Shown: positions 38,766 through 54,109 of the stretch, piece after piece
How positions within the stretch are numbered: position 1 is the stretch's first letter
Layout: every line of letters starts with the position of its first letter
IMG/VR virus record: IMGVR_UViG_3300029258_003221
Span: 1 to 64,000 of that record
Reading direction: 5' to 3' (one strand)
DNA: 64,000 bases
Notes under the pieces: model-generated
Seen by the model: the letters and a program-made list of their open reading frames with translations, nothing else
Told to the model about the DNA's origin: nothing
Database searches by the model: none
Translations under genes and position numbers: made by a program

Positions 38766-40205
38766 TTAGATGATGAAATTCGCCACGCTCATGCGGGCAT
38801 AGAACTTCGATCCTTCCCTTAACAACTTTTTTCCATACCGAGTCAAGATTCCCTTACGAGGGCAGAAGCTCTCAGGATCAAGCACTACGGGTGTTTGTGT
38901 CAGTGGCACGTAGGGACAGTAGAAATATCCCGAGTCCATGTAAGAATCACCTTTGTATCCCATGAGGATTTGACCTTGTGGGAACAGAGGGTCTTTGTAG
39001 AGACGCCATCTGTTGTTGATCGTACCAACATACTGAATACCAAGACTTGAAGTGAAGGTTTCAGAAGGTGCAGGTGCGAAACCAGCAGTAGCAGTTTCGA
39101 AGATAGAAGCAACTTCAGGGCTTGTGACAAGCCAGTTACATCCGCCTCTGAGCGTCTTACGGTGAACGACGTTAGAGACTTCGACAACCTTGATGTACAG
39201 GGCTTCGTACTTCTCTTTGATAGTGTCACCGAGTGCTGTATTGAAGTCCCAAACAGCGACAGTACCGGCGTTGTTACGCAGGTCAGTCAGAACCTCACGG
39301 TCGATCTCAAGATTGATTTCCTGAGCGAGGACAGCAGTCAATTCTGCCTCTGCATCAAGGTTGTGCTGAGATCGGAGGTCTTGCTGAGCTTCATAAGACC
39401 AGACAGCTTTGAGCTTACGGGTCTTAGCAGCAATTTCTTCAGATTCGACAACCAGATTAACTTCTGGGAGGTCTTGGTTGCATTCCATGTTGTATTCGTA
39501 AGAAACAACAGCGTGGTTTTCACCGGGATCACCGTCCCAAGTGAAGGTCATTTCGCCCGTGGTCAGGTCAATCGATCCGCTTGTAACAGCAGGAGAAGGA
39601 GCAGATCCAACGTTGGAGAAAGTGAAGGTTCCAGCTTCAGACACAACAAATGTCTGGATAGCGGTTGATCCATCATAGATGGTACCAGTGAGAGTACCAG
39701 CAAGGATAGGAGTGTGCTCAAGAGCACCGAAGGTGGAGGTTGTATCGCCACCGGCATCCGTTGTGGTAGTTTCATTCTGCACGAACTGATGCGTGTAGTA
39801 GATTTCCAAGTTTCCATCACCGGAAGCCAACTGCTGGAGTGATGTGCTGTCATCCGATGGGAATCCAGCGTTCAGATCAGCACCTCTCATGGCACCTTTG
39901 TTGCTGGAGTAGCGGAATCGCAGGTAGTACACCAAACCAGTTGGGCCGAGCAATGGTTGCACGGAAACAACTTTGTTTGCGATCAGTTGTGGGTAAATTC
40001 TTCGCACAAGCGGAATAGAAATTCGCTTGAACTGAGCGATGTCACCTGTGTCGGTCATGGTCTCATTGATGAGACGCTGGTTTTCCAGAAGCACAGCGGC
40101 TGTGGAACGTTCAAACCGATCAGAAATGCCATCCAGCATCTGAGTTCGACCCCATTTGGCTTCGATCTTAGCTGCTTCGTTTAGATATTGAGCATTTGCA
40201 TTCAT
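38766..40205 (-). CDS. gp23: Major capsid protein, T4 gp23-like
   Basis: IPLVRRIYP...VQPLLGPTGL...RKLKAVWSYEAQQDL...EINLEIDRE...GYFYCPYVPL...KGILTRYG. Confidence 0.97.
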   Translation of the reverse strand: MNANAQYLNEAAKIEAKWGRTQMLDGISDRFERSTAAVLLENQRLINETMTDTGDIAQFKRISIPLVRRIYPQLIANKVVSVQPLLGPTGLVYYLRFRYSSNKGAMRGADLNAGFPSDDSTSLQQLASGDGNLEIYYTHQFVQNETTTTDAGGDTTSTFGALEHTPILAGTLTGTIYDGSTAIQTFVVSEAGTFTFSNVGSAPSPAVTSGSIDLTTGEMTFTWDGDPGENHAVVSYEYNMECNQDLPEVNLVVESEEIAAKTRKLKAVWSYEAQQDLRSQHNLDAEAELTAVLAQEINLEIDREVLTDLRNNAGTVAVWDFNTALGDTIKEKYEALYIKVVEVSNVVHRKTLRGGCNWLVTSPEVASIFETATAGFAPAPSETFTSSLGIQYVGTINNRWRLYKDPLFPQGQILMGYKGDSYMDSGYFYCPYVPLTQTPVVLDPESFCPRKGILTRYGKKLLREGSKFYARMSVANFII

Positions 40206-40239: not shown

Positions 40240-41148
40240 TTATTTCTCTTCAGGGGTTACACCTGAGAGGAAAAGAAGGTCGTTCATTTGATCATTTTCC
40301 ATGAGAACGTCTTCTTTCGGTTGTTTGTTATCAGCTTGTGGATTGTTGAATTCAGAAATAATCTGATCGCCATCCGCCACTCTATGTCCACGCCCGCTTG
40401 CTTTCTTTGCACTTTCCGCTCTTTCTTTTCTTTCGGTTTTCACTGATTCAGTGATCATATTTTGCTGTTCTTTAACAGCTTCGTTCAACTTGTTGTTATG
40501 CATAGTCAAACGAGTGTTCTTAGACTCAAGAACTCTCAGGTTAGCTTTAAGGTCATCGATTTGACGCTGTGACTCTTCCAGCTTAGCTGAGGTGACAGAA
40601 GAGTAATCTTCGTCAGAGAGTCGATCAGCGACGATATCGGTGATCTTGTCAAAAGCGACCTTATGTTCAAGAGTGCGAGGATCGTTGAGAACGTCACGCT
40701 TAGCGTGTTCATAGATTTCAGCGTTCTGCAACTGAAGGAACTGATCGACTTTATCGACCATGAAGTCCTTCATATCCTTGAGTTTATTATCAAATTCTTT
40801 GTAGAGTTCGACTTCGATGTTTTCTTTGTCGCCCTTAGCTTCTTCGATCATTTTGTAAGCTTCTTCGAACTGTTCTTCCATGTGGTTTTCAAATTCCTCA
40901 CGTTGCAGTTCCAGACGCTTCTGGAGATCGTCGATGATGGCAAAGGCTTGCTGATAACCGGCTTCACGAGATTCTTCAATCTCCTTCTTTTCGGTTTCGA
41001 GCTGCTCATAGGCTTCGTTCAACTTTGCGTTGTACTCTTCTTCGAGCTTAGCATTGGACTCTGTCATCATGTCTGCGACAGCCTTGGCAACATCTTCCAC
41101 CTGATCTTCTGGGATCAGTTTATTGAGTGCTTCTGTTAATTTATCCAT
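40240..41148 (-). CDS. gp22: Prohead core scaffold, T4 gp22-like
   Basis: Acidic coiled coil between the protease and capsid genes. Confidence 0.75.
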   Translation of the reverse strand: MDKLTEALNKLIPEDQVEDVAKAVADMMTESNAKLEEEYNAKLNEAYEQLETEKKEIEESREAGYQQAFAIIDDLQKRLELQREEFENHMEEQFEEAYKMIEEAKGDKENIEVELYKEFDNKLKDMKDFMVDKVDQFLQLQNAEIYEHAKRDVLNDPRTLEHKVAFDKITDIVADRLSDEDYSSVTSAKLEESQRQIDDLKANLRVLESKNTRLTMHNNKLNEAVKEQQNMITESVKTERKERAESAKKASGRGHRVADGDQIISEFNNPQADNKQPKEDVLMENDQMNDLLFLSGVTPEEK

Positions 41149-41149
41149 G

Positions 41150-41875
41150 TTAGATTAACCCCGACTTTATGGTTTCTGTTTGAGACTTCACAATACCGCC
41201 CAAGCAAGCTATGAGTGCCTCTTTGCTCACATTATTGGTATGTATGTTTGAGTCCTCATTTTTGAGATGAGAATTATTAGATTCCGATTCTTTTTCGATA
41301 ACAATTCCCCGAGAATTGTCTTCGTGTGCTTCATTCCTTGACTTTCGTGTAGTAGTATGTGGTCCAACAACTTTTTGCTGGAAGGCAGCAAAAGTAGAAG
41401 GGTCAGCAACAGCGTCGAAGGTGATAAGTTTATAGCTTTCACCAATAACGAGGATGCCATCTTCGTTTGTTGATCCATTACCAACTCCTCTTGAGGAGAT
41501 GCCGACCTTAACACCATCATTAATGAGTGCTTGAAGCACTCTTCCATTAGGTGTACTTAGGATTTCGCCTTCTCCCATGAGTACATTTCCTTCCCACCAT
41601 AATCTTGTGATAACGTGGGAAGCATCAGCAAAGTGAATAATACTATCTGAAGGGTGATCAAGTTCACCCAGCAGGCGTCGTTCAGCAATTGCTTCCTGTA
41701 AACGTTGCATGTTTTCATCCAAGACGTTGTATGGATACATGCGTTTGTTTTTGTTAACTGCTTCGGCTTCTTGAAATTTACCTCGGAACCTTACTCGTCC
41801 TGAATCACCAGCACTTTCGCAAAGTTCCAAGTTAAATCCTGAATCGTTACAGCTATCAATGAACATAGATTCCAT
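41150..41875 (-). CDS. gp21: Prohead protease, T4 gp21-like
   Basis: NKNKRMYP, LGELDHP, GISSRGVG, FDAVADPS. Confidence 0.93.
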   Translation of the reverse strand: MESMFIDSCNDSGFNLELCESAGDSGRVRFRGKFQEAEAVNKNKRMYPYNVLDENMQRLQEAIAERRLLGELDHPSDSIIHFADASHVITRLWWEGNVLMGEGEILSTPNGRVLQALINDGVKVGISSRGVGNGSTNEDGILVIGESYKLITFDAVADPSTFAAFQQKVVGPHTTTRKSRNEAHEDNSRGIVIEKESESNNSHLKNEDSNIHTNNVSKEALIACLGGIVKSQTETIKSGLI

Positions 41876-41888
41876 TATTTGCTGCTCC

Positions 41889-43745
41889 TTACTTGTTGAC
41901 TACGAGGTCTTTGTTGTCGATGGTTGCCTTGTGGCCCTTGCCACCGACGCCACCTGCTTCTTTAGGAACATATGGGTTTTGCAGTGCTGGCCATGTGTCA
42001 GAAGACTGCCATGATCCGTGGTGCTGTCCAAATGTGTCCTTATCAACGCCCTTTTCTCCCTTCATGGTGTAATCACCGAATGGAGAAGGAACGTAAGGGT
42101 TTTTCAAGCTTGGGAACGTTTCTTTAGAAGTGTTACCCCAGCTTCTGCCTCTCATTTCATCAGCGTGGCTACCTTTGTAGTTCATGCTGTCCTGTCCGAT
42201 GGCTGGTGCAGCGTCACCCCAGTTTCCTGAGAAGTCACTCGAAGGTTTGTAAGAGTGCTTAGCTTTCTTAGCCATATCTGGGTGATCTCCACTCACGGTA
42301 ACGTGAGCATTGTTAGAGACGCTCCAGACGCCTGTTTCCAGATTGGTTTCTACAAGGCTCTTAGACCAAGAAGCAACCTCTTCAGCCAATTCAAGTTCTG
42401 GCTTAGCTTGGTTATTGAGAACAGCAGCGAGATCATTAAGATAGCTTGCCGTTTCGTTCTTGAGAGCGGTATCGCCACGTCGGTCAGCTTTCTTGTAAAT
42501 CTTCTCAAGAGACTCATAGAGATCAGAGAAGACTTTTCTTTCCAGACCGAATCTTTCATCGATAGCTGGGTAGAAGCTTTCAACAACGTGCTGGAAGTAC
42601 AGGTAGTGATCAGCATTATCTTCTTCCAACTTAGGAGCAGAAGCCAAATGCAGAATTTGTTGTACTCGTTCTGTGTGAGCATCATGTGCGGTTCTCAGAA
42701 TGCCTTCGGCCATGAAGGCACATGTGTTATCGTCATAGTTCTTTTCACCAGCGATTCTAAGAGATTCGCCAATAATTTTTGCCAGTTCAGTTTGAGTGAC
42801 ATAAAGAACATTTGGAAATGCTCCGACAATATTTTCGAGGACTTCTTGCAGTGCCTCATTATCAGAAACATTATTTTGTCGTTTGAGATCAACACAAGCT
42901 CGACAGAAGTTTTGGTTCTCACAGAGCGAAGAAGCACCATCACGCAGAACTTTGACGTTATGGTTCAGGGTCTTCCAGTTGAAGTTCAGGACTTTGCCTT
43001 CGTTTCGAACTTTTCTTGTAGGAACTTTAAGTTGTGTAACATTTCCATTTTCATCAGTTTTGGAAACTGATTCAGCCAGAGCTGGTCCAAGTCTCATGTA
43101 CTGAACGTAATCGAGAACATTTTCAGCTACTGTGTAGCATTCAGCGATTTCATTGCCAGCAGCTTTTTCACGACGGATAAGAGCATCTTTCTTATCATCG
43201 TCTTGTTTTTCCTGACTTGGTGATTTTTTATCTTTGTTATGTTCTTCTTCAGATTTCTCTGAGAAGGTTTTGTGATCATGACTGAATGTGTCATCATCTT
43301 TTTTGGGCTCATGATCGATAGCTTTGTATCCGCCCTTTTTGCTATCGGGAACAATTCGCTTTGTTGCTTCCTGCCAATTGAACAGCCCCATGTAGTTTTC
43401 GAGCAGGGATGTTGCTTTGGTGGTATTGTCAACAAGCAAAGCGTCGATCATTTCCGACAGAGTTGACTTCATTTTGTTCTTCTTAGAATCATGATCGACG
43501 ATCAGTTCTTCAATTCCTGAAAAAGTGATATCGTCGTCTTTGACTTCGTATCCTGCGTGAACGTAGGTGCCATCGAGTGTTTCGAACAGTGCCGTTGATT
43601 CATTGAAGCAACGAAGCTTGAGATGGTCTTTTTGTAATGCTTTTGACAGAAGTTCTTCTGCTTCTCGAAGTTCAACTTCAGAGTTCGTAATAGAACCTTT
43701 AGTGATCGAGTCGAAGTCTTCCTGCTTGATGAGATGTCGCCTCAT
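41889..43745 (-). CDS. Large hypothetical protein of the head operon
   Basis: 618 aa; TATAAATA upstream; C-terminal duplicated motif (F/W)P.L.NPYVP. Confidence 0.7.
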   Translation of the reverse strand: MRRHLIKQEDFDSITKGSITNSEVELREAEELLSKALQKDHLKLRCFNESTALFETLDGTYVHAGYEVKDDDITFSGIEELIVDHDSKKNKMKSTLSEMIDALLVDNTTKATSLLENYMGLFNWQEATKRIVPDSKKGGYKAIDHEPKKDDDTFSHDHKTFSEKSEEEHNKDKKSPSQEKQDDDKKDALIRREKAAGNEIAECYTVAENVLDYVQYMRLGPALAESVSKTDENGNVTQLKVPTRKVRNEGKVLNFNWKTLNHNVKVLRDGASSLCENQNFCRACVDLKRQNNVSDNEALQEVLENIVGAFPNVLYVTQTELAKIIGESLRIAGEKNYDDNTCAFMAEGILRTAHDAHTERVQQILHLASAPKLEEDNADHYLYFQHVVESFYPAIDERFGLERKVFSDLYESLEKIYKKADRRGDTALKNETASYLNDLAAVLNNQAKPELELAEEVASWSKSLVETNLETGVWSVSNNAHVTVSGDHPDMAKKAKHSYKPSSDFSGNWGDAAPAIGQDSMNYKGSHADEMRGRSWGNTSKETFPSLKNPYVPSPFGDYTMKGEKGVDKDTFGQHHGSWQSSDTWPALQNPYVPKEAGGVGGKGHKATIDNKDLVVNK

Positions 43746-43812
43746 ATTTATAAACTCCTCAACTTAGATTGGTCGCTTCCAAAGTGTTAGGCACGTTTTT
43801 GTTCCAACTTAG

Positions 43813-43841
43813 CATAAATAGCCAGTGCCTACTTATTTATA
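43813..43841. promoter_or_regulatory. Divergent T4-type late promoters
   Basis: CATAAATA (+, 43813-20) and TATAAATA (-, 43834-41) between divergent genes. Confidence 0.7.
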
Positions 43842-43886: not shown

Positions 43887-44240
43887 ATGCGGACATTTGC
43901 AGCTTACGCCCAAGAACGAGGTCTTAGAGAAGACATTGACGACATCCAAAACCCTGCTGATGGCTTCAAGCTTAATAGGGATGAAGACATGGGACAGGAT
44001 TATGACCATACTTTGACCGAGCTTATCAAAGCGGTTATGACTAAGTATGAACAGGAAACTATGCAGTTTTTACACGGTATTGCAGACCGTGGAGATCAGG
44101 AGGTTGCTGATCTTCTTAGAAAGCTTGACAAAGAGCACAAGCCATCTGAGCTTGAAGAGCCTCGGCACCCCACAGATATAGACAATGAGGTTATTCCACC
44201 TATTGCTGACACGGGTCATTCTGAAACAGGCGGGGACTAA
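43887..44240 (+). CDS. Acidic hypothetical protein with a capsid-targeting-like N-terminus
   Basis: MRTFAAYAQERGLRE. Confidence 0.65.
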   Translation: MRTFAAYAQERGLREDIDDIQNPADGFKLNRDEDMGQDYDHTLTELIKAVMTKYEQETMQFLHGIADRGDQEVADLLRKLDKEHKPSELEEPRHPTDIDNEVIPPIADTGHSETGGD

Positions 44241-44903
44241 TTAGAAAATTTTAGGGCTTGGTGGCGAAAGAATGTGTTTTGCATTCAAATTCAGAGTTTG
44301 AATTAGAAATTCTTGGTTTTGCATAATGAGTTCTGGCTGATAAATCATTGATCCACCAATACGTGGATCGTGTCCAAAGCCCAATTGAGCAATTTTTGGA
44401 TCACATCCTATGAACAGGCAATTTTGGCATCCTGTGAACCACAACATGTAAATTGTGGTTGTTATTGTCCCAAAGCCAGTTGCTATTCGATTACGCTTAA
44501 TGACTTCATCTTTGTCTAACAACCAGTCATATTTTTCGAAGAACCATGGTTCCAGCTTATTGTGAACCTGTGCATCTACTGTGACAGCCTTACCTTTGGG
44601 TCTATGTTTGGCTATCATAATATCTTGGTAATCAGGTCCGGTATCATCCAAAAATTGTGCTTGAACATAGATTGTTACAGGATCAACCTCTTGAAATTGA
44701 GGTCTCATGCCCAAATGATGTGAAAAGAAGAGCTTATGGGGACTTGGGCAAAGATGTTCATATTGAACGGTATCGTTAATGAAAAAGATTGGATCATTGA
44801 TATCTTTGATGTCTTTTTCGTAATCAAACAGGGTTGGTCCGCTTCCTAAGACGTAAACTGTATCTGATGTGAATTTGTTTTTGAGATCATTTAATGTCAG
44901 CAC
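44241..44903 (-). CDS. DUF115/Maf-like (GT29/GT42-fold) CMP-sugar transferase candidate
   Basis: VYVLGSGPTL, IFFIND, LWFTGCQNCLFIGCD; overlaps kdsB. Confidence 0.65.
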   Translation of the reverse strand: MLTLNDLKNKFTSDTVYVLGSGPTLFDYEKDIKDINDPIFFINDTVQYEHLCPSPHKLFFSHHLGMRPQFQEVDPVTIYVQAQFLDDTGPDYQDIMIAKHRPKGKAVTVDAQVHNKLEPWFFEKYDWLLDKDEVIKRNRIATGFGTITTTIYMLWFTGCQNCLFIGCDPKIAQLGFGHDPRIGGSMIYQPELIMQNQEFLIQTLNLNAKHILSPPSPKIF

Positions 44904-45628
44904 GGCAATTCTGGTATCATTGACGATACAAATTCCTCATAGTCATCTGGGGTGTCAACGCCTTTTGTTGCATTTTTGGTTTCAACCATTGTGATTTGAA
45001 ATCCCTGATCCAAAAATTGGAGTTGTTCGAGATCTTCACTTTTCATAGGAGAATTCCATTCTTGATCTCTCATTTGAAGATAGAATCGAATCATAGTCAG
45101 ACTTAGGCTGTACACGCCAATGTGATATAACAATTCTTCTGAGTTGTGAGGAATTGGTTGGCGGCTAAAGTAAAGAGCATGCCCAAGACTATTCACGACA
45201 ACTTTAACGAGGCTTTCATTTGATTTTTCTGCTGAACCTCGATAATAGAGAGATGCCATTAAAGGTTCATCGGGCATGAATGATGCAGTGTTGATGATGT
45301 TATGGATATCAACTGGGTTTACGCAGGGCCATTCTCCTTGAACATTTGTAACAGTGTCACAATCATCCAGTTTGGATGCCGCTAAGACAACACGGTCAGT
45401 GCCGGATTTGGTAGGCCGTTCATCATAATCTACCTTTGCCCCAAAGTTTTCGCAGGCTTCTTTAATTTTTTTATTATTGGTAGCGATGATAATTTCTTCG
45501 ACGTGTGGAATCTTTTTGCAATTTTCCCACGTGTGTTGAATCAATGGTTTCCCGGTTTCATCCAAAAGCAGTTTACCCGGAAGTCGAGTGCTTTCCATAA
45601 TAGCTGGAATCACAACGTAATTAGCCAT
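44897..45628 (-). CDS. kdsB: CMP-Kdo synthetase (3-deoxy-manno-octulosonate cytidylyltransferase)
   Basis: IPAIMESTRLPGKLL, SGTDRV, NVQGEWP, ALYFSRQPIP, HIGVY, EDLEQLQFL, GVDTPDD. Confidence 0.9.
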   Translation of the reverse strand: MANYVVIPAIMESTRLPGKLLLDETGKPLIQHTWENCKKIPHVEEIIIATNNKKIKEACENFGAKVDYDERPTKSGTDRVVLAASKLDDCDTVTNVQGEWPCVNPVDIHNIINTASFMPDEPLMASLYYRGSAEKSNESLVKVVVNSLGHALYFSRQPIPHNSEELLYHIGVYSLSLTMIRFYLQMRDQEWNSPMKSEDLEQLQFLDQGFQITMVETKNATKGVDTPDDYEEFVSSMIPELPC

Positions 45629-45629
45629 T

Positions 45630-45890
45630 TCAATCTCTTTCAGCTAAGCGATTTATTTTGAGGTCATGATATAAATCAGTTCCTCCAGACACAACACTTT
45701 TTACTTGAAGAGCTTCTTTTTGTCCACCCAAACCTAATTCTTCTAAGATAGCTGCAATGTCTCTGGCTTTCATTTGAGCAAGAGTTTCATTATCCAGACC
45801 TTTCCCATAATTCAAATGGTTAAGGATTCTTCTTAGTTCATCAAATTCACGCTGTCTATTTTCGCAGTATTCCTGAAAAGATTGCATCAT
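45630..45890 (-). CDS. Small protein with a capsid-targeting-like N-terminus
   Basis: MMQSFQEYCENR. Confidence 0.6.
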   Translation of the reverse strand: MMQSFQEYCENRQREFDELRRILNHLNYGKGLDNETLAQMKARDIAAILEELGLGGQKEALQVKSVVSGGTDLYHDLKINRLAERD

Positions 45891-46750
45891 ATCTCCGTCT
45901 TTGAGAAAATCTCGTCAAGCTTATTTAGAAGTGCTTTGTAATCTTCACAATCAAAAACTTCAGTCGCACAATTTCCTATACCATCTTCCGTGTAAAGTTG
46001 AGTGCATCCAACCTTAGTTGCTTTGGAGATTACCTTTTGTTCGTCTTCCTTTTTGCACTTCCATTTTTTGACAACAGATGCATTCGGGCAAATACATCTA
46101 TGTTGCTTCATTCTGTTTTCTACATTTCTTGCGAACCCTAACTTAACACGATTTTTATTGAATTCAGGAATTGGATGTACCATGTAGAAAAATCCATCAG
46201 ACTGTTCACACATAAGATATTTCTTTAATTTCTTGGCATCTTTTATAACCAACGCCTTTTTGTTTCGTCCACCAACCTCTGATCTTGTTTCTACAAATTC
46301 ACATTTGTTTCTTTTGGCCCATCGTTTAACCAAATTCCAGTTGGTATTGTATTGATCGATTATCTCGGTTACAGGGACGCAATTCTTTTGCAACAAACTA
46401 TCGCTGAATTTTTTAGCATCTTTGATAGACATTGCTTGGGTAGGTGGGTGTTTAGAGTTACGAATTGTTTTTGTTTTTATGTCGTTTTTATCAATCCATA
46501 ATCTAACAGTTTTTCTGTCTACATTATTTGTTTTAGCTATGTCTGGAACAGTTACCATATTTTTTGGTAAAGATGTCACATCTTTCCAATGATACTCAAA
46601 TTTGCAGGATTCATCAATAGACATAGCTTGCACTAATTTTCCATTGCCTGCTTTAACTTTTTGAGTTTGGATTTTGTGTTTTTTAACCCATCTTCTTACA
46701 GTTAATGGATCGCAGTTGCATTTTCTTGCTAAGTCGAGTATTGTTATCAT
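45887..46750 (-). CDS. HTH-repeat protein with a C-terminal GIY-YIG-like (T5orf172/MUG113) domain
   Basis: Three (L/I)A...VRxW repeats; GFFYMV...VKLGFARNVENRMKQH...EVF. Confidence 0.8.
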   Translation of the reverse strand: MITILDLARKCNCDPLTVRRWVKKHKIQTQKVKAGNGKLVQAMSIDESCKFEYHWKDVTSLPKNMVTVPDIAKTNNVDRKTVRLWIDKNDIKTKTIRNSKHPPTQAMSIKDAKKFSDSLLQKNCVPVTEIIDQYNTNWNLVKRWAKRNKCEFVETRSEVGGRNKKALVIKDAKKLKKYLMCEQSDGFFYMVHPIPEFNKNRVKLGFARNVENRMKQHRCICPNASVVKKWKCKKEDEQKVISKATKVGCTQLYTEDGIGNCATEVFDCEDYKALLNKLDEIFSKTEI

Positions 46751-46803
46751 AGGTTCTCCTTAACTTATGATAGCGTGCTGTGTATATTTTTTCCTACTCG
46801 TCT

Positions 46804-49329
46804 TTACATTTCTGAAAAATCTATCTCTTCTTCATCCTGCTCTTTAGCGTAATCCTTGATATCCAGATTGTATTTCTGAATATCTTCTTCTGTTGGATCA
46901 GGTAAAGGCGTGGCTCCTGTTGGTCCTTCCATTCCGCCTGATGGGCCTTGATCATCTCCTGTTGGAGCAGGTGCTCCACCCATTCCCATATCATCTTCAC
47001 CGCCTTCTTCACCTTCTGGCGGTTGATCTCCCAACATAGGACTTGGTCCACCAGCTTCTCCACCAATTTCGGTTTCGTCTGGTCCGGGAAGTCCAACGCC
47101 CAAAAGCATTGGGTTTTGAGCAATGATTTGGAGTTTGAGTTCTTCCATCTTTTGGATTTTAAGACGAGCAAGCATCTTCAGAGCTTCTTCTTCATCGTAT
47201 TTCATCCACTTGGTAAGAATATCAAAGTCCGACATGAGTTGTGCTCCTTTCAAAGCACCGGCGTTTTGAATTCTACCAGCTACAACTTCTGATCTTGTTA
47301 GCTCACGCCAATCAGAAGGTGGAGTTAACTTAATTTCCAAATCCTCATAGGCTTCTTTTGGGAAACCAAGCAGCGTTAAGTGACGGTTGCAAATTTCCCA
47401 AAAAGCGTTCTGAATGTGAGATTGAAGTCGTTCGATCATGCGAGCGAACTTCACATCCTGTGCAGACAGGGTGATTCTTGTACTTTGAACATCTTCGTTA
47501 TTGAAATAGTTCTTAGGGAAATTCAGAGCTGTAAACAGTTTATTTCTGAAGTAGACTGTATCATCGATTTCACCAAGATTCTGAGCACCCGGTAAAGTTT
47601 CAACTCTTGTGTTGGAGTTGGGCCTAACAGGAATCCAGTAATCTTCATCGGCTGCTGGTGCGTGCCAACGTTCTTCAACACTGGAGGCACCCGGCAATCC
47701 AGATTTTCCGGTAGCAACCTTTTTCTTTTTGAACTGATCTTTCATTCGTTCAACAAAGGCTTCCGCCCTGTAAGGCGGAAGCTGGAACGTGTCAATATAG
47801 AACACTCTACGTTCTGGTGCTCTTGTCAATCGATAAACCACCATGGCATCTTCCATCAATCTCAATTGATGAGCAGGTCCACGTGCTGCTTCAATAAGAC
47901 TTACACCATATGGATAGAATGTTTGTCTATCATCCCCGACACGAATATGCACAACCTGATCTGCTGCGAATCTAATAGCTGTAGCTTGTTGTAAATCTGC
48001 TTCTGTTGCCTGTGTGACTTCCACACGGGAAAGGCTTTGGTAGTCAGGCCCTTCTTTAGACTGTTGGAATTCAACCAATTTTCCTTTGGTTGTTTCAATT
48101 CGATACATGCTGTCAGGAGGCAATGGAACAAGACCTACGATACCATGTTTAGGGTTTTCCAAATCAATAATGACTTCATAAAAGAAGTCGCCCATGATGA
48201 ATAATCTTTTGGCCATGTCCCAACATGTATTTTGGTCCATATTAAGCATGTCACGATGAAACAATAGATATTCACATTCTTCTTTGACTGATTCATTGCC
48301 GCAAACAACCTGCATTACTCTGCCATCTTCATTTTTCTGGCAATTGTGAACAACTCCCCAGTTTGTACAGAAGTTATGATGTTTCTCAACAGTTAGGTCA
48401 TAGACATCAATCTCTTCCCAAGGTTGTATTCCGACAACTCTTCTTCGATCTTCTTTGCGACCGAGCCATTTCATCTCTTTGTTTGAGAATCCAGCTTTTT
48501 CGATTCGGCTTTTAATTGTCTTGAAGTCATGACCTGTCATGTCAACAATCTGCTGAGTCGTCAATCCTTCAGAGATGTATCGACAAAGTTTGTTAACGCT
48601 TTCAAGTTCAGGATTGTCTTTGCCCGTAGCCCATTCGTCGGCAAACTGTCGTTCGTGAATCCAGCCTTTGCGATGAGTATAAATTCTAGGGAACTGATTG
48701 ACTTTGATTTCGGTAATATCCGGGTTTGGCGAAATGCGATAGAAAGGCATGAGTTCATCACCGGAATTTAGTTCACCTGCTTCTCTCCATGTACCTTTTC
48801 TGGTCATAATTCGGTGATCAGGTGTGCAGATCACATAATTGCCATCATCAAAAATGATTTTGATTGTTTTGGCTTTTTTGGTTTTACGTGCATCAAATGC
48901 CCAGCCAAGCGTATAATCGCCTTTATCCTGATCATAGCAATAGACTAAGAATCGCTCGTTTTCATTGACGAGATCTTCGATCTTTTTATATCCATGTGGT
49001 GTGGCGATAAGAGTATCGCCAGCCAAACAGGTCTCATCTGCGAAAACGGTCATTGCCATTTCGATTTCCGGCATATTTCGCAGTCGTTCGTATTCTTTGT
49101 AGCGATGAACTCTATTAGTGACGGTACTTAAATCTACGAAATCATTAGTGTCTCGAAGGCGAATGGCCCCTCGTCCACCACCTGTAGTTCCGTCATTGCC
49201 ACCCCTGATGTCAGGAATAGCTCCATCAACTGGATATCCCGCTCCACTGGCATCTCGGTCTCTGCGTCTTGCGAGTGGATCATCAGTGAAAGCGTAAGTG
49301 AAAGTTTTGAAATAATCCCACCAAGCCAT
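46804..49329 (-). CDS. gp20: Portal protein, T4 gp20-like, with an intein
   Basis: RLMEDAMVVYRLTRAPERRVFYID, EDYWIP, VETLPGAQNLGEIDD, FARMIERLQ. Confidence 0.96.
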   Translation of the reverse strand: MAWWDYFKTFTYAFTDDPLARRRDRDASGAGYPVDGAIPDIRGGNDGTTGGGRGAIRLRDTNDFVDLSTVTNRVHRYKEYERLRNMPEIEMAMTVFADETCLAGDTLIATPHGYKKIEDLVNENERFLVYCYDQDKGDYTLGWAFDARKTKKAKTIKIIFDDGNYVICTPDHRIMTRKGTWREAGELNSGDELMPFYRISPNPDITEIKVNQFPRIYTHRKGWIHERQFADEWATGKDNPELESVNKLCRYISEGLTTQQIVDMTGHDFKTIKSRIEKAGFSNKEMKWLGRKEDRRRVVGIQPWEEIDVYDLTVEKHHNFCTNWGVVHNCQKNEDGRVMQVVCGNESVKEECEYLLFHRDMLNMDQNTCWDMAKRLFIMGDFFYEVIIDLENPKHGIVGLVPLPPDSMYRIETTKGKLVEFQQSKEGPDYQSLSRVEVTQATEADLQQATAIRFAADQVVHIRVGDDRQTFYPYGVSLIEAARGPAHQLRLMEDAMVVYRLTRAPERRVFYIDTFQLPPYRAEAFVERMKDQFKKKKVATGKSGLPGASSVEERWHAPAADEDYWIPVRPNSNTRVETLPGAQNLGEIDDTVYFRNKLFTALNFPKNYFNNEDVQSTRITLSAQDVKFARMIERLQSHIQNAFWEICNRHLTLLGFPKEAYEDLEIKLTPPSDWRELTRSEVVAGRIQNAGALKGAQLMSDFDILTKWMKYDEEEALKMLARLKIQKMEELKLQIIAQNPMLLGVGLPGPDETEIGGEAGGPSPMLGDQPPEGEEGGEDDMGMGGAPAPTGDDQGPSGGMEGPTGATPLPDPTEEDIQKYNLDIKDYAKEQDEEEIDFSEM
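48343..49029 (-). mobile_element. Intein (229 aa) in the portal
   Basis: N-terminal CLAGDTLIAT, block B CTPDHRIMT, C-terminal VYDLTVEKHHNF...VVHN followed by +1 Cys. Confidence 0.95.
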
Positions 49330-49386
49330 AAATTGTACCTCGTTTTCCTGTTACCTATTCATTAGTTAGTAGAGGATTTAGTAATT

Positions 49387-50184
49387 TTGAAAGTTTTGAC
49401 GTGTTCAGATAACGCTCTTGGAAATGCAATTTCTGATTTGTTGCCTTTGCTTTCGATCTGGAAAAGGCGTAATGCGACAATTCATGGCATTTTGAGAAAC
49501 AAACATGCTTATCGTCTATTCAGAGAAACTCCTTATTTTGATAGAATTTTACCACTCTATGACAAAGATGATTTGTGGCATGATTTAATCAAAGATGTAC
49601 CTCAATGGTTTGAAGATTACGATAAGGTCTATGTTGTCAATAACAGGCAAATGCCGGGGGTGGAAAAAAGCGAAAAGGTACCTGTTGATTACCGTCCAGC
49701 AATGAGGGTGGCAGAATATGGAGAGCTTTTTTCGCCAGAAGATATATTGCTGGATATCAATTGGTATCAAAAGTACTACAAAGACTTCAAATGTCACAGC
49801 AAAACAGTGTTATTGAACACCCAATCAACCAGTTTTCATCGATGTTATACGAGGCCATTAAAGGAAGAATTGGCTAAATTAGGATTTGATGTTCGTGAAT
49901 TTAATTACAGAAGAGATATTCGAGAGAATTTACATTTAGTTCATCAGGCAGCTCATATTTTAACTGTTGACACATCAACCATGTGGTTGGCTAGAACATT
50001 AGGGAAGGTTCCTTATGTTTTTATGGCACGTGAATCAGGGACTCTTCCTGCTTTTGGCCCAAACACAGAAAAGAGGCATGGGCTTAAAAACTTGATACCA
50101 TGGAAGGAAAATCTAAACGATACAGCTCCTGACTTTATTGCCAGTCAATTTTCAGGAGCTATTCAAACCATTCCGGTTATTTGA
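49387..50184 (+). CDS. GT9 (heptosyltransferase-like) glycosyltransferase
   Basis: N-terminal ALGNAISDLLPLL; C-terminal LTVDTSTMWLARTLGKVPYVF. Confidence 0.65.
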   Translation: MKVLTCSDNALGNAISDLLPLLSIWKRRNATIHGILRNKHAYRLFRETPYFDRILPLYDKDDLWHDLIKDVPQWFEDYDKVYVVNNRQMPGVEKSEKVPVDYRPAMRVAEYGELFSPEDILLDINWYQKYYKDFKCHSKTVLLNTQSTSFHRCYTRPLKEELAKLGFDVREFNYRRDIRENLHLVHQAAHILTVDTSTMWLARTLGKVPYVFMARESGTLPAFGPNTEKRHGLKNLIPWKENLNDTAPDFIASQFSGAIQTIPVI

Positions 50185-50702
50185 TGGAAGTCTTTGCTGT
50201 GTCTTTTTCCATTTCTGGAAGAGAACACGTAGCTATTAGCCGTAAAACTTCTTCCAACAAACTCTTTATCGCCTTTGAGCCCCCATGCTTTATCTTTTTT
50301 GACATAAGCGATGGTTACATGTGGGACATAGCTTTCGTAGCGATTGGAATAGACAACATTTGATTTCAACTTTTCATTAAGTGCACAAATTTGTTGACTG
50401 TGCACTTTAACGAATACGACATCGAACAGATTTGATCTTGTAAAAAGGTCAATTTCACCAAGTTGTATATCAACACTGGATTCGTTTCTGAATGTCTCGA
50501 ATGTCCTACGAGGTTTATCTGAATGGATTCCATAGAGAATCGTGACATGCATTTCATTTTCACGTCCGAAAAAGGGGTCTTTCGGGTCTCGAAAAAGAAT
50601 ATGATCAGGGATACTCTCATTACCCCATTGCATAATCTCTTCTGCTAAATAATGGGGCACATCGACGTGGACAGACGAGAAATCATAACGAATATTCTGC
50701 AT
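50163..50702 (-). CDS. 2H phosphoesterase, paralogue of 23220..23768
   Basis: GRENEMHVTILYG and YVPHVTIAYVKK. Confidence 0.8.
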   Translation of the reverse strand: MQNIRYDFSSVHVDVPHYLAEEIMQWGNESIPDHILFRDPKDPFFGRENEMHVTILYGIHSDKPRRTFETFRNESSVDIQLGEIDLFTRSNLFDVVFVKVHSQQICALNEKLKSNVVYSNRYESYVPHVTIAYVKKDKAWGLKGDKEFVGRSFTANSYVFSSRNGKRHSKDFHQITGMV

Positions 50703-52217: not shown

Positions 52218-54020
52218 TTACCAGCCGAATTCTTTTAACAATTTGTTGTGTTTTCTTTTGAAATGACTAGGCACAGCAAACTCATCTTTATCAATCGCAT
52301 TCATATTTAAATCTTCTTCTTCAAACCAATTGTCTGGAGCATCTTTAGTCAATTCAGCTTTGATATCTTCATAGATTTTGATTTTGAATGCTTCTTTTTC
52401 TTCTTCAGGAACATCATAACCAACAGGTACAAATCGGGCACGAGCATCACGTGCGTGCAAAGCCAGACACATTGCCATAATAGCATCATCATGGTGACCT
52501 TTTTCAGCTTCAGCTCGTTTGGTTTGTTTGTTGTAAACGAATGTTCCCAGTTCTTTAACGAATCTTCGACTACGAATTGCCATGCTTTTGTTGATCAAAC
52601 GTGTGTGTAGTGTTTCAAGATACAATGGTCTGTTGCTTCTTGTTGTTTTAACGCCTGCTTGTTCTTTTTTACCCTGCACAGTGTGAAAAATGTTTCCGTA
52701 ATGAAAATCGTGCTGTAGTTTATTGAGAACCGTTAATCCGCAACTTTGACTTTCAACAACAATGCATGCATCATTGTAGGTATGTCCAACCATGGCGAGG
52801 ATTTGAGCAAATGAATGCGGAGGGCAAGTATTACTGTAAAACTCTGCAACTTGTTCACATGTGCTTTGGTCTATGACTTGAAAACAAGTATTGTCTGCCT
52901 CTTCGCCTTGTCCTTCGGCAGGGTCTACACCGATGATATACTCTCTGCCATCAACAGGTTCTTTCCACACATGAAGAGCACCACGTTCCCACAAATCTTC
53001 GTCTTCAACTTTAAGTTCACGAGCTTCTGCACTATTGTTCCATTCCGGGAATAACATTCTCAAAGGTTCGATGTCTTTAATTTTTGCACGAAGTTCTTCA
53101 ATGATGTGTGGCGGAATGTAAGAATCACCAGCACCAAGAAAGTCACGAAGCACTTCCTGTTTCCAGCCTTTTTCACCAAGCTGAGCTTTTGTTTGTTTAA
53201 CCCATTTTTCATCGTGGTAATCGGGGTGTTCCCAATAGTCCAAGTCGATGATGTGAAAAAAGTTATCACCTTTTTCTGCATTGTGATATGTTTCTTCATA
53301 CCAGTTGCCTACACCGTTAACCGTAGAAATTGCGATACATCGACCACCAGTTGAAATAGTCGGATACATAGCTTTCCAAAACTTTTCCATGTTTGGAATA
53401 AACGCTGCTTCGTCAAGAATCAAATATGTAATAGCACGACCACGGGCAGCTTCTGGTGTATAGAAGAACAGTTTGCAGCCTGTATCGGAGAAAATCTTTT
53501 GGTGGTCGTTATTTTTGTCCATTTGAGGAGTCATCCAAGATGGAAGTTCCTCTAAGGCTCTTTTAGCGACTTCACCAGCAGCAATAGCTTCACGGTCAGA
53601 TTTAGATAAGACCATCATAGTCTCATCGAGCTTGAATAAACTTCTCCATAAACACCAGTTTACGGTCACGGTTGTCAATCCACCTTGCCTAAACTTAGAA
53701 ATTATGTTAAATCTGTAATCAGCGTATTCTTCAATTACCCTTCTTTGGTAATTGTACAGTACAAATGGAAGTAAACCGTGAATAGGATGAGTAATCTTAA
53801 CGTACTTGTGAGAAAAGTATGGAAATGACAAAGCACATTTGTACATCTCCAATTCTTGCTTCTCTACGCTGTAATTCTCAATATCTTCGATGGTTTCCAT
53901 TGGATCAATTTCCAATTCAAACTTATCGAATTTGTAATATTCACTGTCATATGTGGCATCATAGTACTCTTTCAATGAAGCGTATTTGCCACGCCAATTT
54001 GTATCAACAATGTAAGACAT
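52218..54020 (-). CDS. gp17: Terminase large subunit, T4 gp17-like
   Basis: SKFRQGGLTT (adenine/Walker A region), LILDEAAF (Walker B), ISTVNG, IGVDPAEG, HDDAIMA; start refined. Confidence 0.96.
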   Translation of the reverse strand: MSYIVDTNWRGKYASLKEYYDATYDSEYYKFDKFELEIDPMETIEDIENYSVEKQELEMYKCALSFPYFSHKYVKITHPIHGLLPFVLYNYQRRVIEEYADYRFNIISKFRQGGLTTVTVNWCLWRSLFKLDETMMVLSKSDREAIAAGEVAKRALEELPSWMTPQMDKNNDHQKIFSDTGCKLFFYTPEAARGRAITYLILDEAAFIPNMEKFWKAMYPTISTGGRCIAISTVNGVGNWYEETYHNAEKGDNFFHIIDLDYWEHPDYHDEKWVKQTKAQLGEKGWKQEVLRDFLGAGDSYIPPHIIEELRAKIKDIEPLRMLFPEWNNSAEARELKVEDEDLWERGALHVWKEPVDGREYIIGVDPAEGQGEEADNTCFQVIDQSTCEQVAEFYSNTCPPHSFAQILAMVGHTYNDACIVVESQSCGLTVLNKLQHDFHYGNIFHTVQGKKEQAGVKTTRSNRPLYLETLHTRLINKSMAIRSRRFVKELGTFVYNKQTKRAEAEKGHHDDAIMAMCLALHARDARARFVPVGYDVPEEEKEAFKIKIYEDIKAELTKDAPDNWFEEEDLNMNAIDKDEFAVPSHFKRKHNKLLKEFGW

Positions 54021-54109
54021 AAAATCCCCCAACTCTCTGTTACCTAGAAAGTAGTTATTAACTAAAAGGCGATTTTTGTTGCACATTCCAGAAAAAAATG
54101 AGGTAACAA

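What the first reader, a model, noticed from the sequence alone, without database searches (positions are those of the whole stretch)
44241..50184. CMP-Kdo synthetase plus CMP-sugar-type transferase and a GT9 embedded in the head module
Seen: kdsB overlaps a DUF115/Maf-like gene (VLGSGPTL, comparable to the GT42 IAGNGPSL motif) just upstream of the scaffold/capsid operon, and a GT9-like gene is divergent from the portal gene. Established: KdsB makes CMP-Kdo, and GT29/GT42/Maf enzymes use CMP-ulosonates. Inference: virion glycosylation with Kdo-like sugar, or LPS remodelling for superinfection exclusion.
Basis: partly seen in the sequence, partly recalled or inferred. Interest (0 to 1): 0.7.

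Follow-up and report, generated by a model that had tools for sequence, protein, structure and literature searches.

The report
Phage Kdo-activating and Kdo-transfer gene pair
A very large T4-like phage carries, inside its head-gene cluster, a two-gene cassette that most likely activates the bacterial sugar Kdo and attaches it to a target still unknown, plus a separate heptosyltransferase-like gene; the pairing recurs in many phages and some bacteria, which gives a function to a previously nameless family of small phage proteins.

Summary
All three genes are real. The 243-aa gene (44897-45628, minus) is a KdsB-type CMP-Kdo synthetase, scoring above NCBIfam's curated cut-off. Its stop overlaps by 7 nt the GTG start of a 220-aa gene (44241-44903). 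That protein models confidently (pLDDT 93) as a minimal DUF115 fold. The fold matches Maf glycosyltransferase (Z 11.5) and archaeal MptE kinase (Z 11.6) equally, then sialyltransferases and E. coli WaaZ. Structure cannot settle its function; context does. In 9 of 12 lineages examined, homologues down to 30% identity sit directly beside a CMP-ulosonate synthetase, KdsB-type or PseF-like. Longer homologues are fused to glycosyltransferase and methyltransferase domains. The 265-aa gene divergent from the intein-bearing portal has no HMM hit but is a compact GT9 fold (Z 18.8). Its copy here has Asn where E. coli WaaC, WaaF and all nine aligned relatives have Asp. Best reading: a CMP-Kdo synthetase plus Kdo-transferase cassette. 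The acceptor, virion protein or host envelope glycan, is unresolved. The head-module position is weak evidence, because the cassette sits elsewhere in other phages and this slot is a general accessory hotspot. Verdict: new variant of a known kind, moderate interest.

The parts
44897..45628 (-). kdsB: CMP-Kdo synthetase (3-deoxy-manno-octulosonate cytidylyltransferase), 243 aa
   Evidence: PF02348 E 1.2e-32. NF003952 scores 201.7 bits against a cut-off of 193. Alignment with E. coli KdsB keeps R15, K19, Q97, R156, the LEQL motif and G223/D225, but position 10 is Ile where E. coli has Arg. It is the only CTP_transf_3 gene in the 234-kb record.
44241..44903 (-). Minimal DUF115-fold protein, 220 aa: predicted CMP-Kdo-dependent Kdo transferase
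   Evidence: PF01973 26.7 bits, below the cut-off. AF2 pLDDT 93.4. VIA Z: MptE 11.6, Maf 5mu5 11.5, Cst-I 8.7, CstII 8.4. WaaZ model TM 0.51. AFDB clusters are mostly DUF115/Maf. Family motifs are GSGPT, FIND, HH or HD, GTITT, IGCD and YDxRI, with G166 and D179 invariant. A CMP-ulosonate synthetase is adjacent in 9 of 12 lineages. dN is 0.17-0.24 with saturated dS.
44897..44903 (-). 7-nt start/stop overlap (GTGCTGA) joining kdsB to the transferase gene
   Evidence: Read directly from the sequence. Overlapping or abutting co-directional arrangements also occur in L001, L002, L016/L017 and L027. Translational coupling is an inference.
49387..50184 (+). Compact GT9-fold glycosyltransferase-like gene, 265 aa, divergent from the portal gene
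   Evidence: No HMM hit. Foldseek top 30 are all GT9 (WaaF 1psw E 1.9e-7, WaaC, TibC). VIA Z 18.8. Atlas features 0.96. D195 aligns with the invariant Asp of the GT9 DT(G/S) motif, but residue 13 is Asn where 11 of 12 aligned sequences have Asp. Absent in L001 and L013, duplicated in L012.
46804..49329 (-). T4-type portal protein (gp20-like) interrupted by an intein, 841 aa
   Evidence: Portal_T4 E 1.8e-73 at residues 348-718 and Intein_splicing E 5.3e-15 at residues 113-329. PHROG 213 portal.
45887..46750 (-). HTH-rich 287-aa protein, probably a mobile insertion in the slot
   Evidence: Several HTH families, all but two (HTH_23, HTH_17) below their cut-offs. Weak matches to PHROG 'HNH endonuclease' families. 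Among relatives it is found only in L039.
45630..45890 (-). Small 86-aa protein upstream of kdsB, function unknown
   Evidence: No family hit. 59% identical homologue at the same place in L001.
43887..44240 (+). Conserved 117-aa acidic protein on the opposite strand, function unknown
   Evidence: No family hit. Found at the same place in most relatives of the clade. pI 4.5.
41889..43745 (-). Clade-specific 618-aa head-module protein (p618), function unknown
   Evidence: No family hit. Conserved between the portal slot and the prohead protease in 44 IMG/VR relatives.
41150..41875 (-). Prohead protease (gp21-like)
   Evidence: Peptidase_S77 E 1.8e-26. PHROG 207 E 2.6e-47.
40240..41148 (-). 302-aa gene in the scaffold position, between the protease and the capsid gene
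   Evidence: Position only. There is a sub-threshold YabA match (17.9 bits, cut-off 30). Conserved in L001 and L013.
38766..40205 (-). Major capsid protein (gp23-like)
   Evidence: tblastn matches T4-like capsid genes in 2581 phage records; the best is LR756511.1 at 75.6%. Pfam Gp23 is recorded on the L001 orthologue.

Best explanation
The overlapping genes 44897-45628 and 44241-44903 form a two-gene cassette. KdsB takes free Kdo made by a Kdo-producing (Gram-negative-type) host and CTP, and makes CMP-Kdo, a donor that decays within minutes to an hour. The co-translated 220-aa DUF115-fold enzyme uses that donor to add Kdo to an acceptor. The GSGPT loop would hold the CMP, as the GNGPS loop does in CstII. 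The conserved H/D63, D168 and invariant D179/R181 would lie at the catalytic site.

Shown: the gene identities, the fold, the conserved pairing and purifying selection. Inferred: the donor, the catalytic residues and translational coupling.

The acceptor is not resolved. I lean slightly to a soluble target, such as a virion head protein or a glycan on one (about 40%), over host LPS core or another envelope glycan (about 35%). The GT9-fold gene at 49387-50184 is a separate, variable accessory glycosyltransferase-like gene in the same hotspot. Its link to the Kdo pair is unproven, and the copy here may be catalytically weakened.
For: KdsB identity: NF003952 above the cut-off, with most residues shared with E. 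coli KdsB.

Fold: DUF115, pLDDT 93.4. It matches Maf at Z 11.5, sialyltransferases at Z 7-8.7 and the WaaZ model at TM 0.51. WaaZ, the KdoIII transferase (PMC6358824), is itself only a sub-threshold PF01973 hit at 29.6 bits, about the same level as this protein.

Pairing: a cytidylyltransferase gene is directly adjacent in the window phage, L001, L002, L012, L015, L016/17, L020, L025/26 and L027/28. Where the partner was typed it is KdsB-type (window, L001, L002, L012, L015, L027); it is PseF-like beside the more distant P0014 subfamily.

Mosaicism: window versus L001 is 75% identical in the transferase but 47% in KdsB. Window versus L012 is 63% in KdsB but 38% in the transferase, which is inverted there. 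The pairing is therefore kept through independent replacement.

Other support: long homologues fuse the domain to GT32-like and Methyltransf_24 domains. Maf enzymes can transfer Kdo from CMP-Kdo to Ser/Thr (bioRxiv 10.1101/2020.06.03.131540). CMP-Kdo lability is noted in PMC12856342. No KdsA, SIS or GmhA gene is in the 234-kb record, so the sugar must come from the host.

Lean to a soluble acceptor: pI is 5.7 (family 5.4-8.8) against 9.0-9.8 for WaaZ, WaaC and WaaA. GT4, GT31 and sugar-type methyltransferases occupy the same head-module slot in relatives.
Against: No biochemical data exist.
- The best single PDB match is the kinase MptE (Z 11.6), so the fold alone allows a non-glycosyltransferase chemistry.
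- KdsB here has Ile at the position of E. coli Arg10, and its relatives have Val or His. Activity or specificity could differ.
- Three of 12 lineages lack an adjacent synthetase (L014, L019 and the P0012 contig).
- The cassette also occurs outside structural modules, and the slot also holds unrelated genes. Position therefore says little about the acceptor.
- All characterised single-domain enzymes of this fold (Cst-I/II, WaaZ) act on LPS/LOS glycans, which favours the host-envelope rival.
- The complex prediction for KdsB with the transferase gave no answer.
Confidence: 0.6

Rival explanations
1. Host envelope remodelling. The same cassette acts at the inner membrane on nascent LPS core (as WaaZ adds a third Kdo) or on an O-antigen or capsule precursor. 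This would change the cell surface late in infection, block superinfection, or stop progeny adsorbing to debris. The GT9-like enzyme would add a heptose-type sugar in the same pathway.
For: WaaZ is a single-domain enzyme with a similar fold (TM 0.51). [quoted passage not shown] Cst-I and CstII, also single-domain, act on lipooligosaccharide. GT9 enzymes WaaC and WaaF are the best matches of the 49387 protein. Bacterial homologues (L015, the P0012 contig) lie among GT2, GT32-like and polysaccharide deacetylase genes. In L027 a GT8-like gene follows the pair.
Against: The transferase and its relatives are acidic to neutral (pI 5.4-8.8), whereas the membrane-peripheral LPS enzymes tested are at pI 9.0-9.8. 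Profile comparison with WaaZ is not significant. The genes sit in a virion-gene cluster, an odd place for a function that would pay early. The GT9-like copy lacks the conserved Asp13.
Confidence: 0.35
2. The donor is not Kdo itself but a related 2-keto-3-deoxy ulosonate, for example an amino-Kdo such as Kdo8N, Ko or Kdn. It would be activated by a KdsB-like enzyme of shifted specificity.
For: Position 10 (Arg in E. coli KdsB) is Ile, Val or His in four of the five sequences aligned with it (Arg in L002), and the QGDEP motif reads QGEWP. Orthologues in L001, L002 and L012 fall just under the NF003952 cut-off. In L012 a DegT aminotransferase and a GFO/IDH/MocA oxidoreductase lie beside the pair.
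Against: The window enzyme passes the KdsB subfamily cut-off, and the PseF model scores only 32.8 bits. No aminotransferase or other sugar-modifying gene lies next to the pair in the window or in L001.
Confidence: 0.12
3. The 44241 protein is an MptE-like pyrophosphokinase, or another nucleotide-dependent enzyme of the thiamin-pyrophosphokinase-like fold, unrelated to KdsB.
For: MptE (8sd5) is the top PDB match at Z 11.6 and the top Swiss-Prot model match at E 2.2e-4. Thiamin pyrophosphokinases also match at Z 5.5-7.4. The Pfam family carries the MptE name.
Against: Maf glycosyltransferase ties at Z 11.5. A family profile finds no MptE in PDB sequences even at E 10. The gene is adjacent to CMP-ulosonate synthetases in 9 of 12 lineages. 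Long homologues are fused to GT domains. No pterin or folate gene neighbours it, except metH in the one bacterial locus L019.
Confidence: 0.04
4. DNA hypermodification: the pair decorates a modified base in phage DNA with an acidic sugar, by analogy with T-even glucosylation and RB69 arabinosylation.
For: T4-like phages commonly glycosylate DNA, and virus glycosyltransferases that hypermodify DNA are diverse (PMC13326640; reference list in PMC12619734).
Against: No thymidylate-synthase-like hydroxymethylase was found in the 234-kb record, though the record is only about 44% complete. The described arabinosyl pathway uses other enzyme types. I know of no DUF115-fold DNA glycosyltransferase.
Confidence: 0.04

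Closest known systems
E. coli KdsB (CMP-Kdo synthetase)
   Same: Same family and length, 35% identity. The residues invariant across the alignment include R15, K19, Q97, R156, the LEQL motif and G223/D225. It passes NCBIfam's KdsB subfamily cut-off.
   Different: Phage-encoded. Ile replaces Arg10, and QGEWP replaces QGDEP. It is joined by a start/stop overlap to a transferase gene rather than standing alone.
WaaZ (E. coli K-12 KdoIII transferase; CAZy GT73 from my own knowledge; Pfam WaaZ_KDO_III)
   Same: A single-domain protein of similar fold (TM 0.51). It is also only a sub-threshold PF01973 match. It is required for adding Kdo to an existing glycan. A (G/S)GPT loop lies near the N-terminus.
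   Different: There is no significant sequence relationship (hhalign probability under 1%). WaaZ is basic (pI 9.25) and 283 aa; the phage protein is acidic (pI 5.7) and 220 aa. WaaZ lies in the waa operon, not beside kdsB.
Maf flagellin nonulosonic-acid glycosyltransferases (PDB 5mu5; GkMaf, CbMaf)
   Same: The best glycosyltransferase match: Z 11.5 over 166 residues of the central catalytic domain. They use CMP-ulosonates and can transfer Kdo to Ser/Thr. Acidic residues are essential.
   Different: 5mu5 is 632 aa and matches the phage protein only over its central domain (residues 261-495). The phage protein is the bare 220-aa domain. There is no flagellin context.
GT42 (Cst-I, CstII) and GT29 sialyltransferases
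   Same: Same GT-A-variant fold (Z 7-8.7).
   Different: Only 12-14% identity, with lower structural scores than Maf or MptE. The donor is presumed to be Kdo rather than sialic acid.
Archaeal MptE (6-hydroxymethyl-7,8-dihydropterin pyrophosphokinase, PDB 8sd5)
   Same: The top structural match, Z 11.6 over 162 residues.
   Different: It is a kinase, not a glycosyltransferase. No sequence-level match was found. The genomic context is entirely different.
GT9 heptosyltransferases WaaC and WaaF, and the protein heptosyltransferase TibC
   Same: The 49387 protein aligns over its whole length (Z 18.2-18.8 for WaaC, WaaF and 3tov; 15 for TibC). It keeps G12 and the DT(S/G) Asp.
   Different: It is about 60-80 residues shorter than WaaC and WaaF (319 and 348 aa). 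It gets no PF01075 hit. It has Asn in place of Asp13 in this genome. It is phage-encoded and variably present.
Virus-encoded glycan systems: mycobacteriophage virion glycosylation (Freeman 2023, cited in PMC12619734), the predicted CroV and Fadolivirus Kdo pathways (PMC9614988), and cyanophage S-SCSM2R KdsA/KdsB (PMC12801897)
   Same: Viral genomes carrying Kdo-pathway or glycosyltransferase genes, in some cases near capsid genes.
   Different: None of the papers read here describes a KdsB joined to a DUF115-fold transferase. The giant viruses encode the whole Kdo pathway, whereas this phage has only the activation step.

Membership tests
KdsB / CMP-Kdo synthetase (NCBIfam NF003952, Pfam PF02348) | Profile score above the curated cut-off | tested here: met
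   NF003952 201.7 bits against 193. PF02348 114 bits against 22.6.
KdsB / CMP-Kdo synthetase (NCBIfam NF003952, Pfam PF02348) | Conserved nucleotide- and sugar-binding residues of E. coli KdsB | tested here: inconclusive
   R15, K19, Q97, R156, LEQL and G223/D225 are kept. Position 10 is Ile where E. coli has Arg, and QGDEP reads QGEWP. The roles of these residues come from my own knowledge of KdsB structures.
KdsB / CMP-Kdo synthetase (NCBIfam NF003952, Pfam PF02348) | Makes CMP-Kdo from CTP and Kdo | not testable with these tools
   Needs an enzyme assay.
DUF115 / MptE-like (Pfam PF01973) | Profile score above the gathering threshold | tested here: not met
   26.7 bits against 34.6. Only 5 of 38 family members reach E 0.01.
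DUF115 / MptE-like (Pfam PF01973) | Shared three-dimensional fold | tested here: met
   Z 11.6 (MptE) and 11.5 (Maf), standing well above unrelated chains. AFDB cluster hits are mostly named DUF115.
MptE pterin pyrophosphokinase | Sequence-level relationship to characterised MptE | tested here: not met
   A profile of 38 family members finds no MptE chain in PDB sequences at E up to 10.
MptE pterin pyrophosphokinase | Pterin or folate pathway context | tested here: not met
   Neighbours are kdsB, GT and virion genes. The only one-carbon-metabolism neighbour is metH in L019.
WaaZ-type Kdo transferase (GT73 / Pfam PF27901) | Profile or sequence match to WaaZ | tested here: not met
   hhalign of the family against E. 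coli WaaZ gives probability 0.4%, E 0.16. PF27901 is not in the local Pfam copy, so that model itself was not run.
WaaZ-type Kdo transferase (GT73 / Pfam PF27901) | Fold similarity | tested here: met
   TM 0.51 by query, probability 0.95, against the AlphaFold model of P27241. WaaZ_KDO_III clusters are among the Atlas structural neighbours of the nearest related cluster, not of this protein's own model.
Maf flagellin glycosyltransferase | Central catalytic domain | tested here: met
   5mu5 residues 261-495 align at Z 11.5, rmsd 3.3.
Maf flagellin glycosyltransferase | Additional N- and C-terminal domains and a flagellar gene context | tested here: not met
   The protein is 220 aa and a single domain. 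No flagellar genes are nearby.
GT9 heptosyltransferase (Pfam PF01075) | Profile score above the threshold | tested here: not met
   No Pfam hit for the 49387 protein. A PF01075 search of the whole record hits three other ORFs at 71-76 kb but not this one.
GT9 heptosyltransferase (Pfam PF01075) | GT-B fold closest to GT9 structures | tested here: met
   The Foldseek top 30 are all GT9. Z is 18.2-18.8 for WaaC, WaaF and 3tov, 15 for TibC, and 11.4 or less for other GT-B enzymes.
GT9 heptosyltransferase (Pfam PF01075) | Asp at the WaaC Asp13 position (proposed catalytic base, from my own knowledge) and Asp of the DT(G/S) motif | tested here: inconclusive
   D195 is invariant. Residue 13 is Asn in the window copy, but Asp in all nine aligned relatives and in WaaC and WaaF.

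The most novel reading that the evidence does not exclude
Huge T4-like phages coat a head protein with Kdo-containing, LPS-inner-core-like glycans (Kdo, perhaps extended by GT9-type enzymes). The portal-to-prohead slot would be a fast-evolving glycan island that swaps chemistries between close relatives: Kdo, an amino-ulosonate, GT4, GT31 or methylated sugars. The widespread small DUF115-like proteins of tailed phages would then be a new family of CMP-ulosonate transferases whose sugar is set by the neighbouring synthetase.
Probability: 0.25. Interest if true: 0.8.

Novelty: new variant of a known kind. Interest (0 to 1): 0.55.

Why it matters
Small DUF115-like proteins of about 200-250 aa form large clusters made up almost entirely of tailed-phage sequences that carry no name. 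Tying one branch of them to KdsB, and a neighbouring branch to a PseF-like synthetase, gives a testable function: transfer of acidic 8- or 9-carbon sugars.

If the acceptor is a virion protein, this would be the first Kdo-type virion glycosylation in a phage and would extend virion glycosylation beyond mycobacteriophages. If it is LPS, it would be a lytic-phage route to rewriting the inner core of the host's main receptor. Either way the enzyme is a compact candidate tool for installing Kdo on chosen acceptors.

Tried and rejected
- Megablast of 12 kb, and tblastn of the 220-aa and 265-aa proteins, against 50,697 GenBank phage records found nothing. KdsB found six distant phage copies.
- PHROGs gave nothing for the three proteins.
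- The PDB sequence search with the family profile gave only a chance match to thioredoxin reductase.
- hhalign of the family against E. coli WaaZ, and against the record's second weak MptE-like ORF (G000 78902-79756), was not significant.
- BLASTP of the 49387 protein against a GT9-like ORF of the same genome was not significant.
- The search for related loci with the broad alignment failed for lack of a conserved stretch. A narrower alignment worked.
With the window's own proteins it returned 'no answer', which is not evidence either way.
- The T4 late-promoter consensus TATAAATA occurs only twice in the window, both just upstream of p618, but that count is not above chance. The sigma-70 and terminator scans were at background.
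- Searches of the 234-kb record for KdsA, SIS (KdsD-type), SIS_2 (GmhA-type) and thymidylate-synthase-like genes were all negative. The record is only about 44% complete.
- I first read the GT4 gene in LR756511's slot as a dedicated 'glycosylation slot'. A survey of the 44 IMG/VR loci (about 30 with both portal and p618) showed a general accessory hotspot instead.
- I did not attempt residue-level mapping of the Maf catalytic residues E324 and D415 onto the model, because the tools return no coordinates.


Full report
**What the window is.** The window is the first 64 kb of a 234,631-bp IMG/VR virus record that CheckV rates about 44% complete. The region of the finding is a T4-type head module on the minus strand:
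- large terminase (52218-54086; terminase domains are recorded on the L001 orthologue);
- a 2H-phosphoesterase/Acb1-like gene (50163-50702);
- the portal, interrupted by an intein (46804-49329);
- a variable slot;
- a clade-specific 618-aa protein, p618 (41889-43745);
- the Peptidase_S77 prohead protease;
- a 302-aa gene in the scaffold position;
- the gp23-like capsid protein (38766-40205).

The nearest GenBank record is LR756511.1, a 595-kb uncultured phage whose capsid protein is 75.6% identical. This is therefore a fragment of a huge T4-like phage.

**Check of the observation.** All three genes exist where stated.
- The 243-aa protein is KdsB-type. Pfam CTP_transf_3 gives E 1.2e-32. NCBIfam NF003952 gives 201.7 bits against a curated cut-off of 193, and the PseF model only 32.8 bits.
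- Its stop overlaps the GTG start of the 220-aa gene within the heptamer GTGCTGA.
- The 220-aa protein contains VLGSGPTL. It is a sub-threshold PF01973 match, at 26.7 bits against 34.6, in two stretches that cover both ends of the profile.
- The 265-aa gene, divergent from the portal gene, has no hit in Pfam, PHROGs or NCBIfam. A PF01075 scan of the whole record misses it but finds three other GT9-like ORFs at 71-76 kb.

**The 220-aa protein.** An exhaustive phmmer search found 94 representatives. An alignment of 38 of them defines the motifs (I/V)VGSGPT, FINDxV, FFxxH(H/D), GTITTxxHFxW, IGCD and YDxRI. G166 and D179 are invariant.

The AF2 model is confident, with pLDDT 93.4 and pTM 0.90. Its matches are:
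- Foldseek and VIA-align on Foldseek's own list: archaeal MptE kinase first (Z 11.6), then SteA, Cst-I, CstII and mammalian sialyltransferases.
- The Foldseek-independent scan: Maf glycosyltransferase 5mu5 at Z 11.5, level with MptE.
- Swiss-Prot models: MptE, ST3Gal and E. coli WaaZ at TM 0.51.
- AFDB clusters: mostly 'DUF115' and Maf entries.

WaaZ is needed for the third Kdo of the K-12 core (PMC6358824). It is itself only a 29.6-bit PF01973 match. So the fold is that of the CMP-ulosonate transferases, but also that of one kinase. Structure cannot decide between them.

**Context decides.** I looked at the neighbours of family members from 12 lineages. A cytidylyltransferase gene is directly adjacent, overlapping or within a few bases, in nine:
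- the window phage (with a near-identical second IMG/VR contig, L018/L029);
- L001, L002 and L012;
- L015 and L020, from Planctomycete-type bacterial contigs;
- L016/L017, L025/L026 and L027/L028.

It is absent from a 10-kb contig (L014), from a deltaproteobacterial chromosome locus beside metH (L019), and from a 5.7-kb GT-rich contig.

The partner is KdsB-type in six of the seven lineages I scored with NCBIfam: the window, L001, L002, L012, L015 and L027 (153-202 bits on NF003952). Beside the more distant P0014 subfamily its best match is PseF. The partners in L016/L017 and L020 were matched only by tblastn to the window's KdsB.

Orientation varies between co-directional overlap and convergent, and so does genomic setting. 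The two genes have also been replaced independently. Window versus L001 is 75% identical in the transferase but 47% in KdsB. Window versus L012 is 63% in KdsB but 38% in the transferase, which is inverted there. The transferase is under constraint, with dN 0.17-0.24 and saturated synonymous sites. Long homologues fuse the domain to a GT32-like DXD domain and a Methyltransf_24 domain.

Two further facts fit. Maf enzymes can put Kdo on Ser/Thr from CMP-Kdo. CMP-Kdo is short-lived and is usually generated in situ. The simplest reading is a synthetase plus transferase cassette for Kdo.

**KdsB detail.** The alignment with E. coli KdsB keeps R15, K19, Q97, R156, LEQL and G223/D225. Position 10, Arg in E. 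coli and in L002, is Ile here, Val in L001 and L012, and His in L015. QGDEP reads QGEWP. This leaves some room for a shifted specificity. In L012 a DegT aminotransferase and a GFO/IDH/MocA oxidoreductase sit next to the pair, which hints at an amino-ulosonate there. The record has no KdsA, SIS or SIS_2 gene, so the free sugar must come from the host.

**The 265-aa protein.** A profile search added relatives, and the model has pLDDT 85.
- The 30 best Foldseek PDB matches are all GT9 enzymes: WaaF, WaaC, TibC and 3tov.
- VIA Z is 18.2-18.8 for WaaC, WaaF and 3tov, 15 for TibC, and 11.4 or less for other GT-B enzymes.
- Language-model neighbours are GT9 clusters at 0.95-0.96.

Two caveats apply.
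- The gene is a variable insertion. It is absent in L001 and LR756511 and tandemly duplicated in L012. In L011 it lies inside a large GT and methyltransferase cluster.
- The window copy reads G-N at residues 12-13, where nine aligned relatives, WaaC and WaaF read G-D. From my own knowledge, Asp13 is the proposed catalytic base of WaaC, so this copy may be impaired.

Nothing links this gene specifically to the Kdo pair.

**Does the head-module position say what is glycosylated?** Only weakly. In L002 the pair lies between gp13- and gp15-like genes. In L027 it lies beside a GT8-like gene, gp32 and a RecA/UvsX-type gene.

Using p618 as a marker I collected 44 IMG/VR relatives. Of about 30 loci with both portal and p618, only the window phage carries the pair; outside that set it is also in L001 and L012. 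Elsewhere the slot holds:
- a GT4 gene (LR756511, L060);
- GT31 plus a DHO_dh-like gene (L035);
- TylF- and FkbM-type methyltransferases (L036, L042);
- DUF3431, an R2K ATP-grasp, OGFr_N, a CapR-like gene, an ART-PolyVal-like gene, Dam, a HAD hydrolase or unknown genes;
- or nothing at all.

Glycan-type genes are frequent there, but the slot is a general accessory hotspot.

**Evidence on the acceptor, both ways.**
- For a soluble or virion acceptor: the transferase is acidic, at pI 5.7 (family 5.4-8.8), whereas WaaZ, WaaC and WaaA are at 9.0-9.8. Maf and TibC show that both folds can glycosylate proteins.
- For an LPS acceptor: every characterised single-domain enzyme of this fold acts on LPS or LOS glycans. 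Bacterial homologues lie in polysaccharide clusters.

I put the acceptor at about 40% virion-associated, 35% host envelope and 25% other or unknown.

**Comparison with what is known.** Viral Kdo genes have been reported or predicted in CroV, Fadolivirus and cyanophage S-SCSM2R. Phage virion glycosylation is established for mycobacteriophages (cited). My text searches found no description of a KdsB joined to a DUF115-fold transferase in a virus; the only paper holding both 'DUF115' and 'Kdo' is the Maf preprint. The nearest protein clusters are unnamed and almost entirely from tailed phages. I therefore file this as a new variant of a known kind. The chemistry is familiar, but the minimal enzyme family and its fixed pairing are not described.

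**Limits.** Everything about activity, donor and acceptor is inference. The adjacency tally rests on 12 lineages that I chose down the hit list, not on a census. The complex prediction gave no answer. The host is unknown.

Noticed in passing
window 46804-49329 (minus): The T4-type portal gene is interrupted by an intein (Intein_splicing at residues 113-329, ahead of the Portal_T4 domain at 348-718). The orthologues in L001 and L012 carry it too.
   Followed up: partly
window 49423-49425 (codon 13 of the GT9-like gene): The window's GT9-like protein has Asn13 where all nine aligned relatives and E. coli WaaC and WaaF have Asp, a one-letter difference. The identical protein is recorded on three contigs, so it is probably not a sequencing error.
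   Followed up: partly
window 50163-50702 (minus): A 179-aa 2H-phosphoesterase (weak 2',5' RNA ligase / cyclic phosphodiesterase matches). Its orthologues in L001 and L012 carry a weak Pfam Acb1 mark, so it could be an anti-CBASS cyclic-nucleotide phosphodiesterase.
   Followed up: no
window 45887-46750 (minus): A 287-aa protein made of several helix-turn-helix motifs, with weak matches to PHROG 'HNH endonuclease' families. Among about 30 relatives it is present only in L039, so it looks like a mobile insertion next to the sugar genes.
   Followed up: partly
G000 68676-70802 (outside the window; L009 4676-6802): A Volactin-type actin homologue (E 1e-59) interrupted by an intein with a LAGLIDADG endonuclease domain: a phage actin-like gene carrying its own mobile element.
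   Followed up: no
G000 71052-79756 (outside the window; L009 7052-15756): A second sugar-gene cluster. It holds a GT9-like 331-aa ORF, a 573-aa GT2+GT9 fusion, a 283-aa GT9-like ORF, an aldehyde dehydrogenase and a 284-aa ORF with a weak full-length MptE-like match, next to a GIY-YIG/HTH homing-endonuclease-like gene.
   Followed up: partly
L012 2838-5035: In this relative a DegT/DnrJ/EryC1 aminotransferase and a GFO/IDH/MocA oxidoreductase sit beside the kdsB/DUF115 pair, and the GT9-like gene is tandemly duplicated. This suggests an amino-ulosonate variant of the same system.
   Followed up: no
window 38766-40205 (capsid protein residues about 145-160): A capsid loop is Thr-rich (runs of T and S around a DAGG motif) in the window phage and L001, which carry the cassette. 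It is not Thr-rich in LR756511, which lacks the cassette. With only three related sequences this is a lead only.
   Followed up: partly
window 43745-43752 and 43834-43841 (minus): The only two copies of the T4 late-promoter consensus TATAAATA in the 64-kb window both lie just upstream of p618. The count is not above chance (36 of 100 shuffles reach it).
   Followed up: partly
window 41889-43745 (C-terminal 90 residues of p618): The clade-specific 618-aa head-module protein ends with two copies of an L-(K/Q)-N-P-Y-V-P motif in a Gly/Ser/Trp-rich tail. It has no family match and its function is unknown.
   Followed up: no
L027 1378-4662: In a different T4-like phage the cassette is flanked by an R2K-clade ATP-grasp gene upstream and a GT8-like gene downstream. 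An R2K ATP-grasp gene also occupies the portal slot in L048.
   Followed up: no
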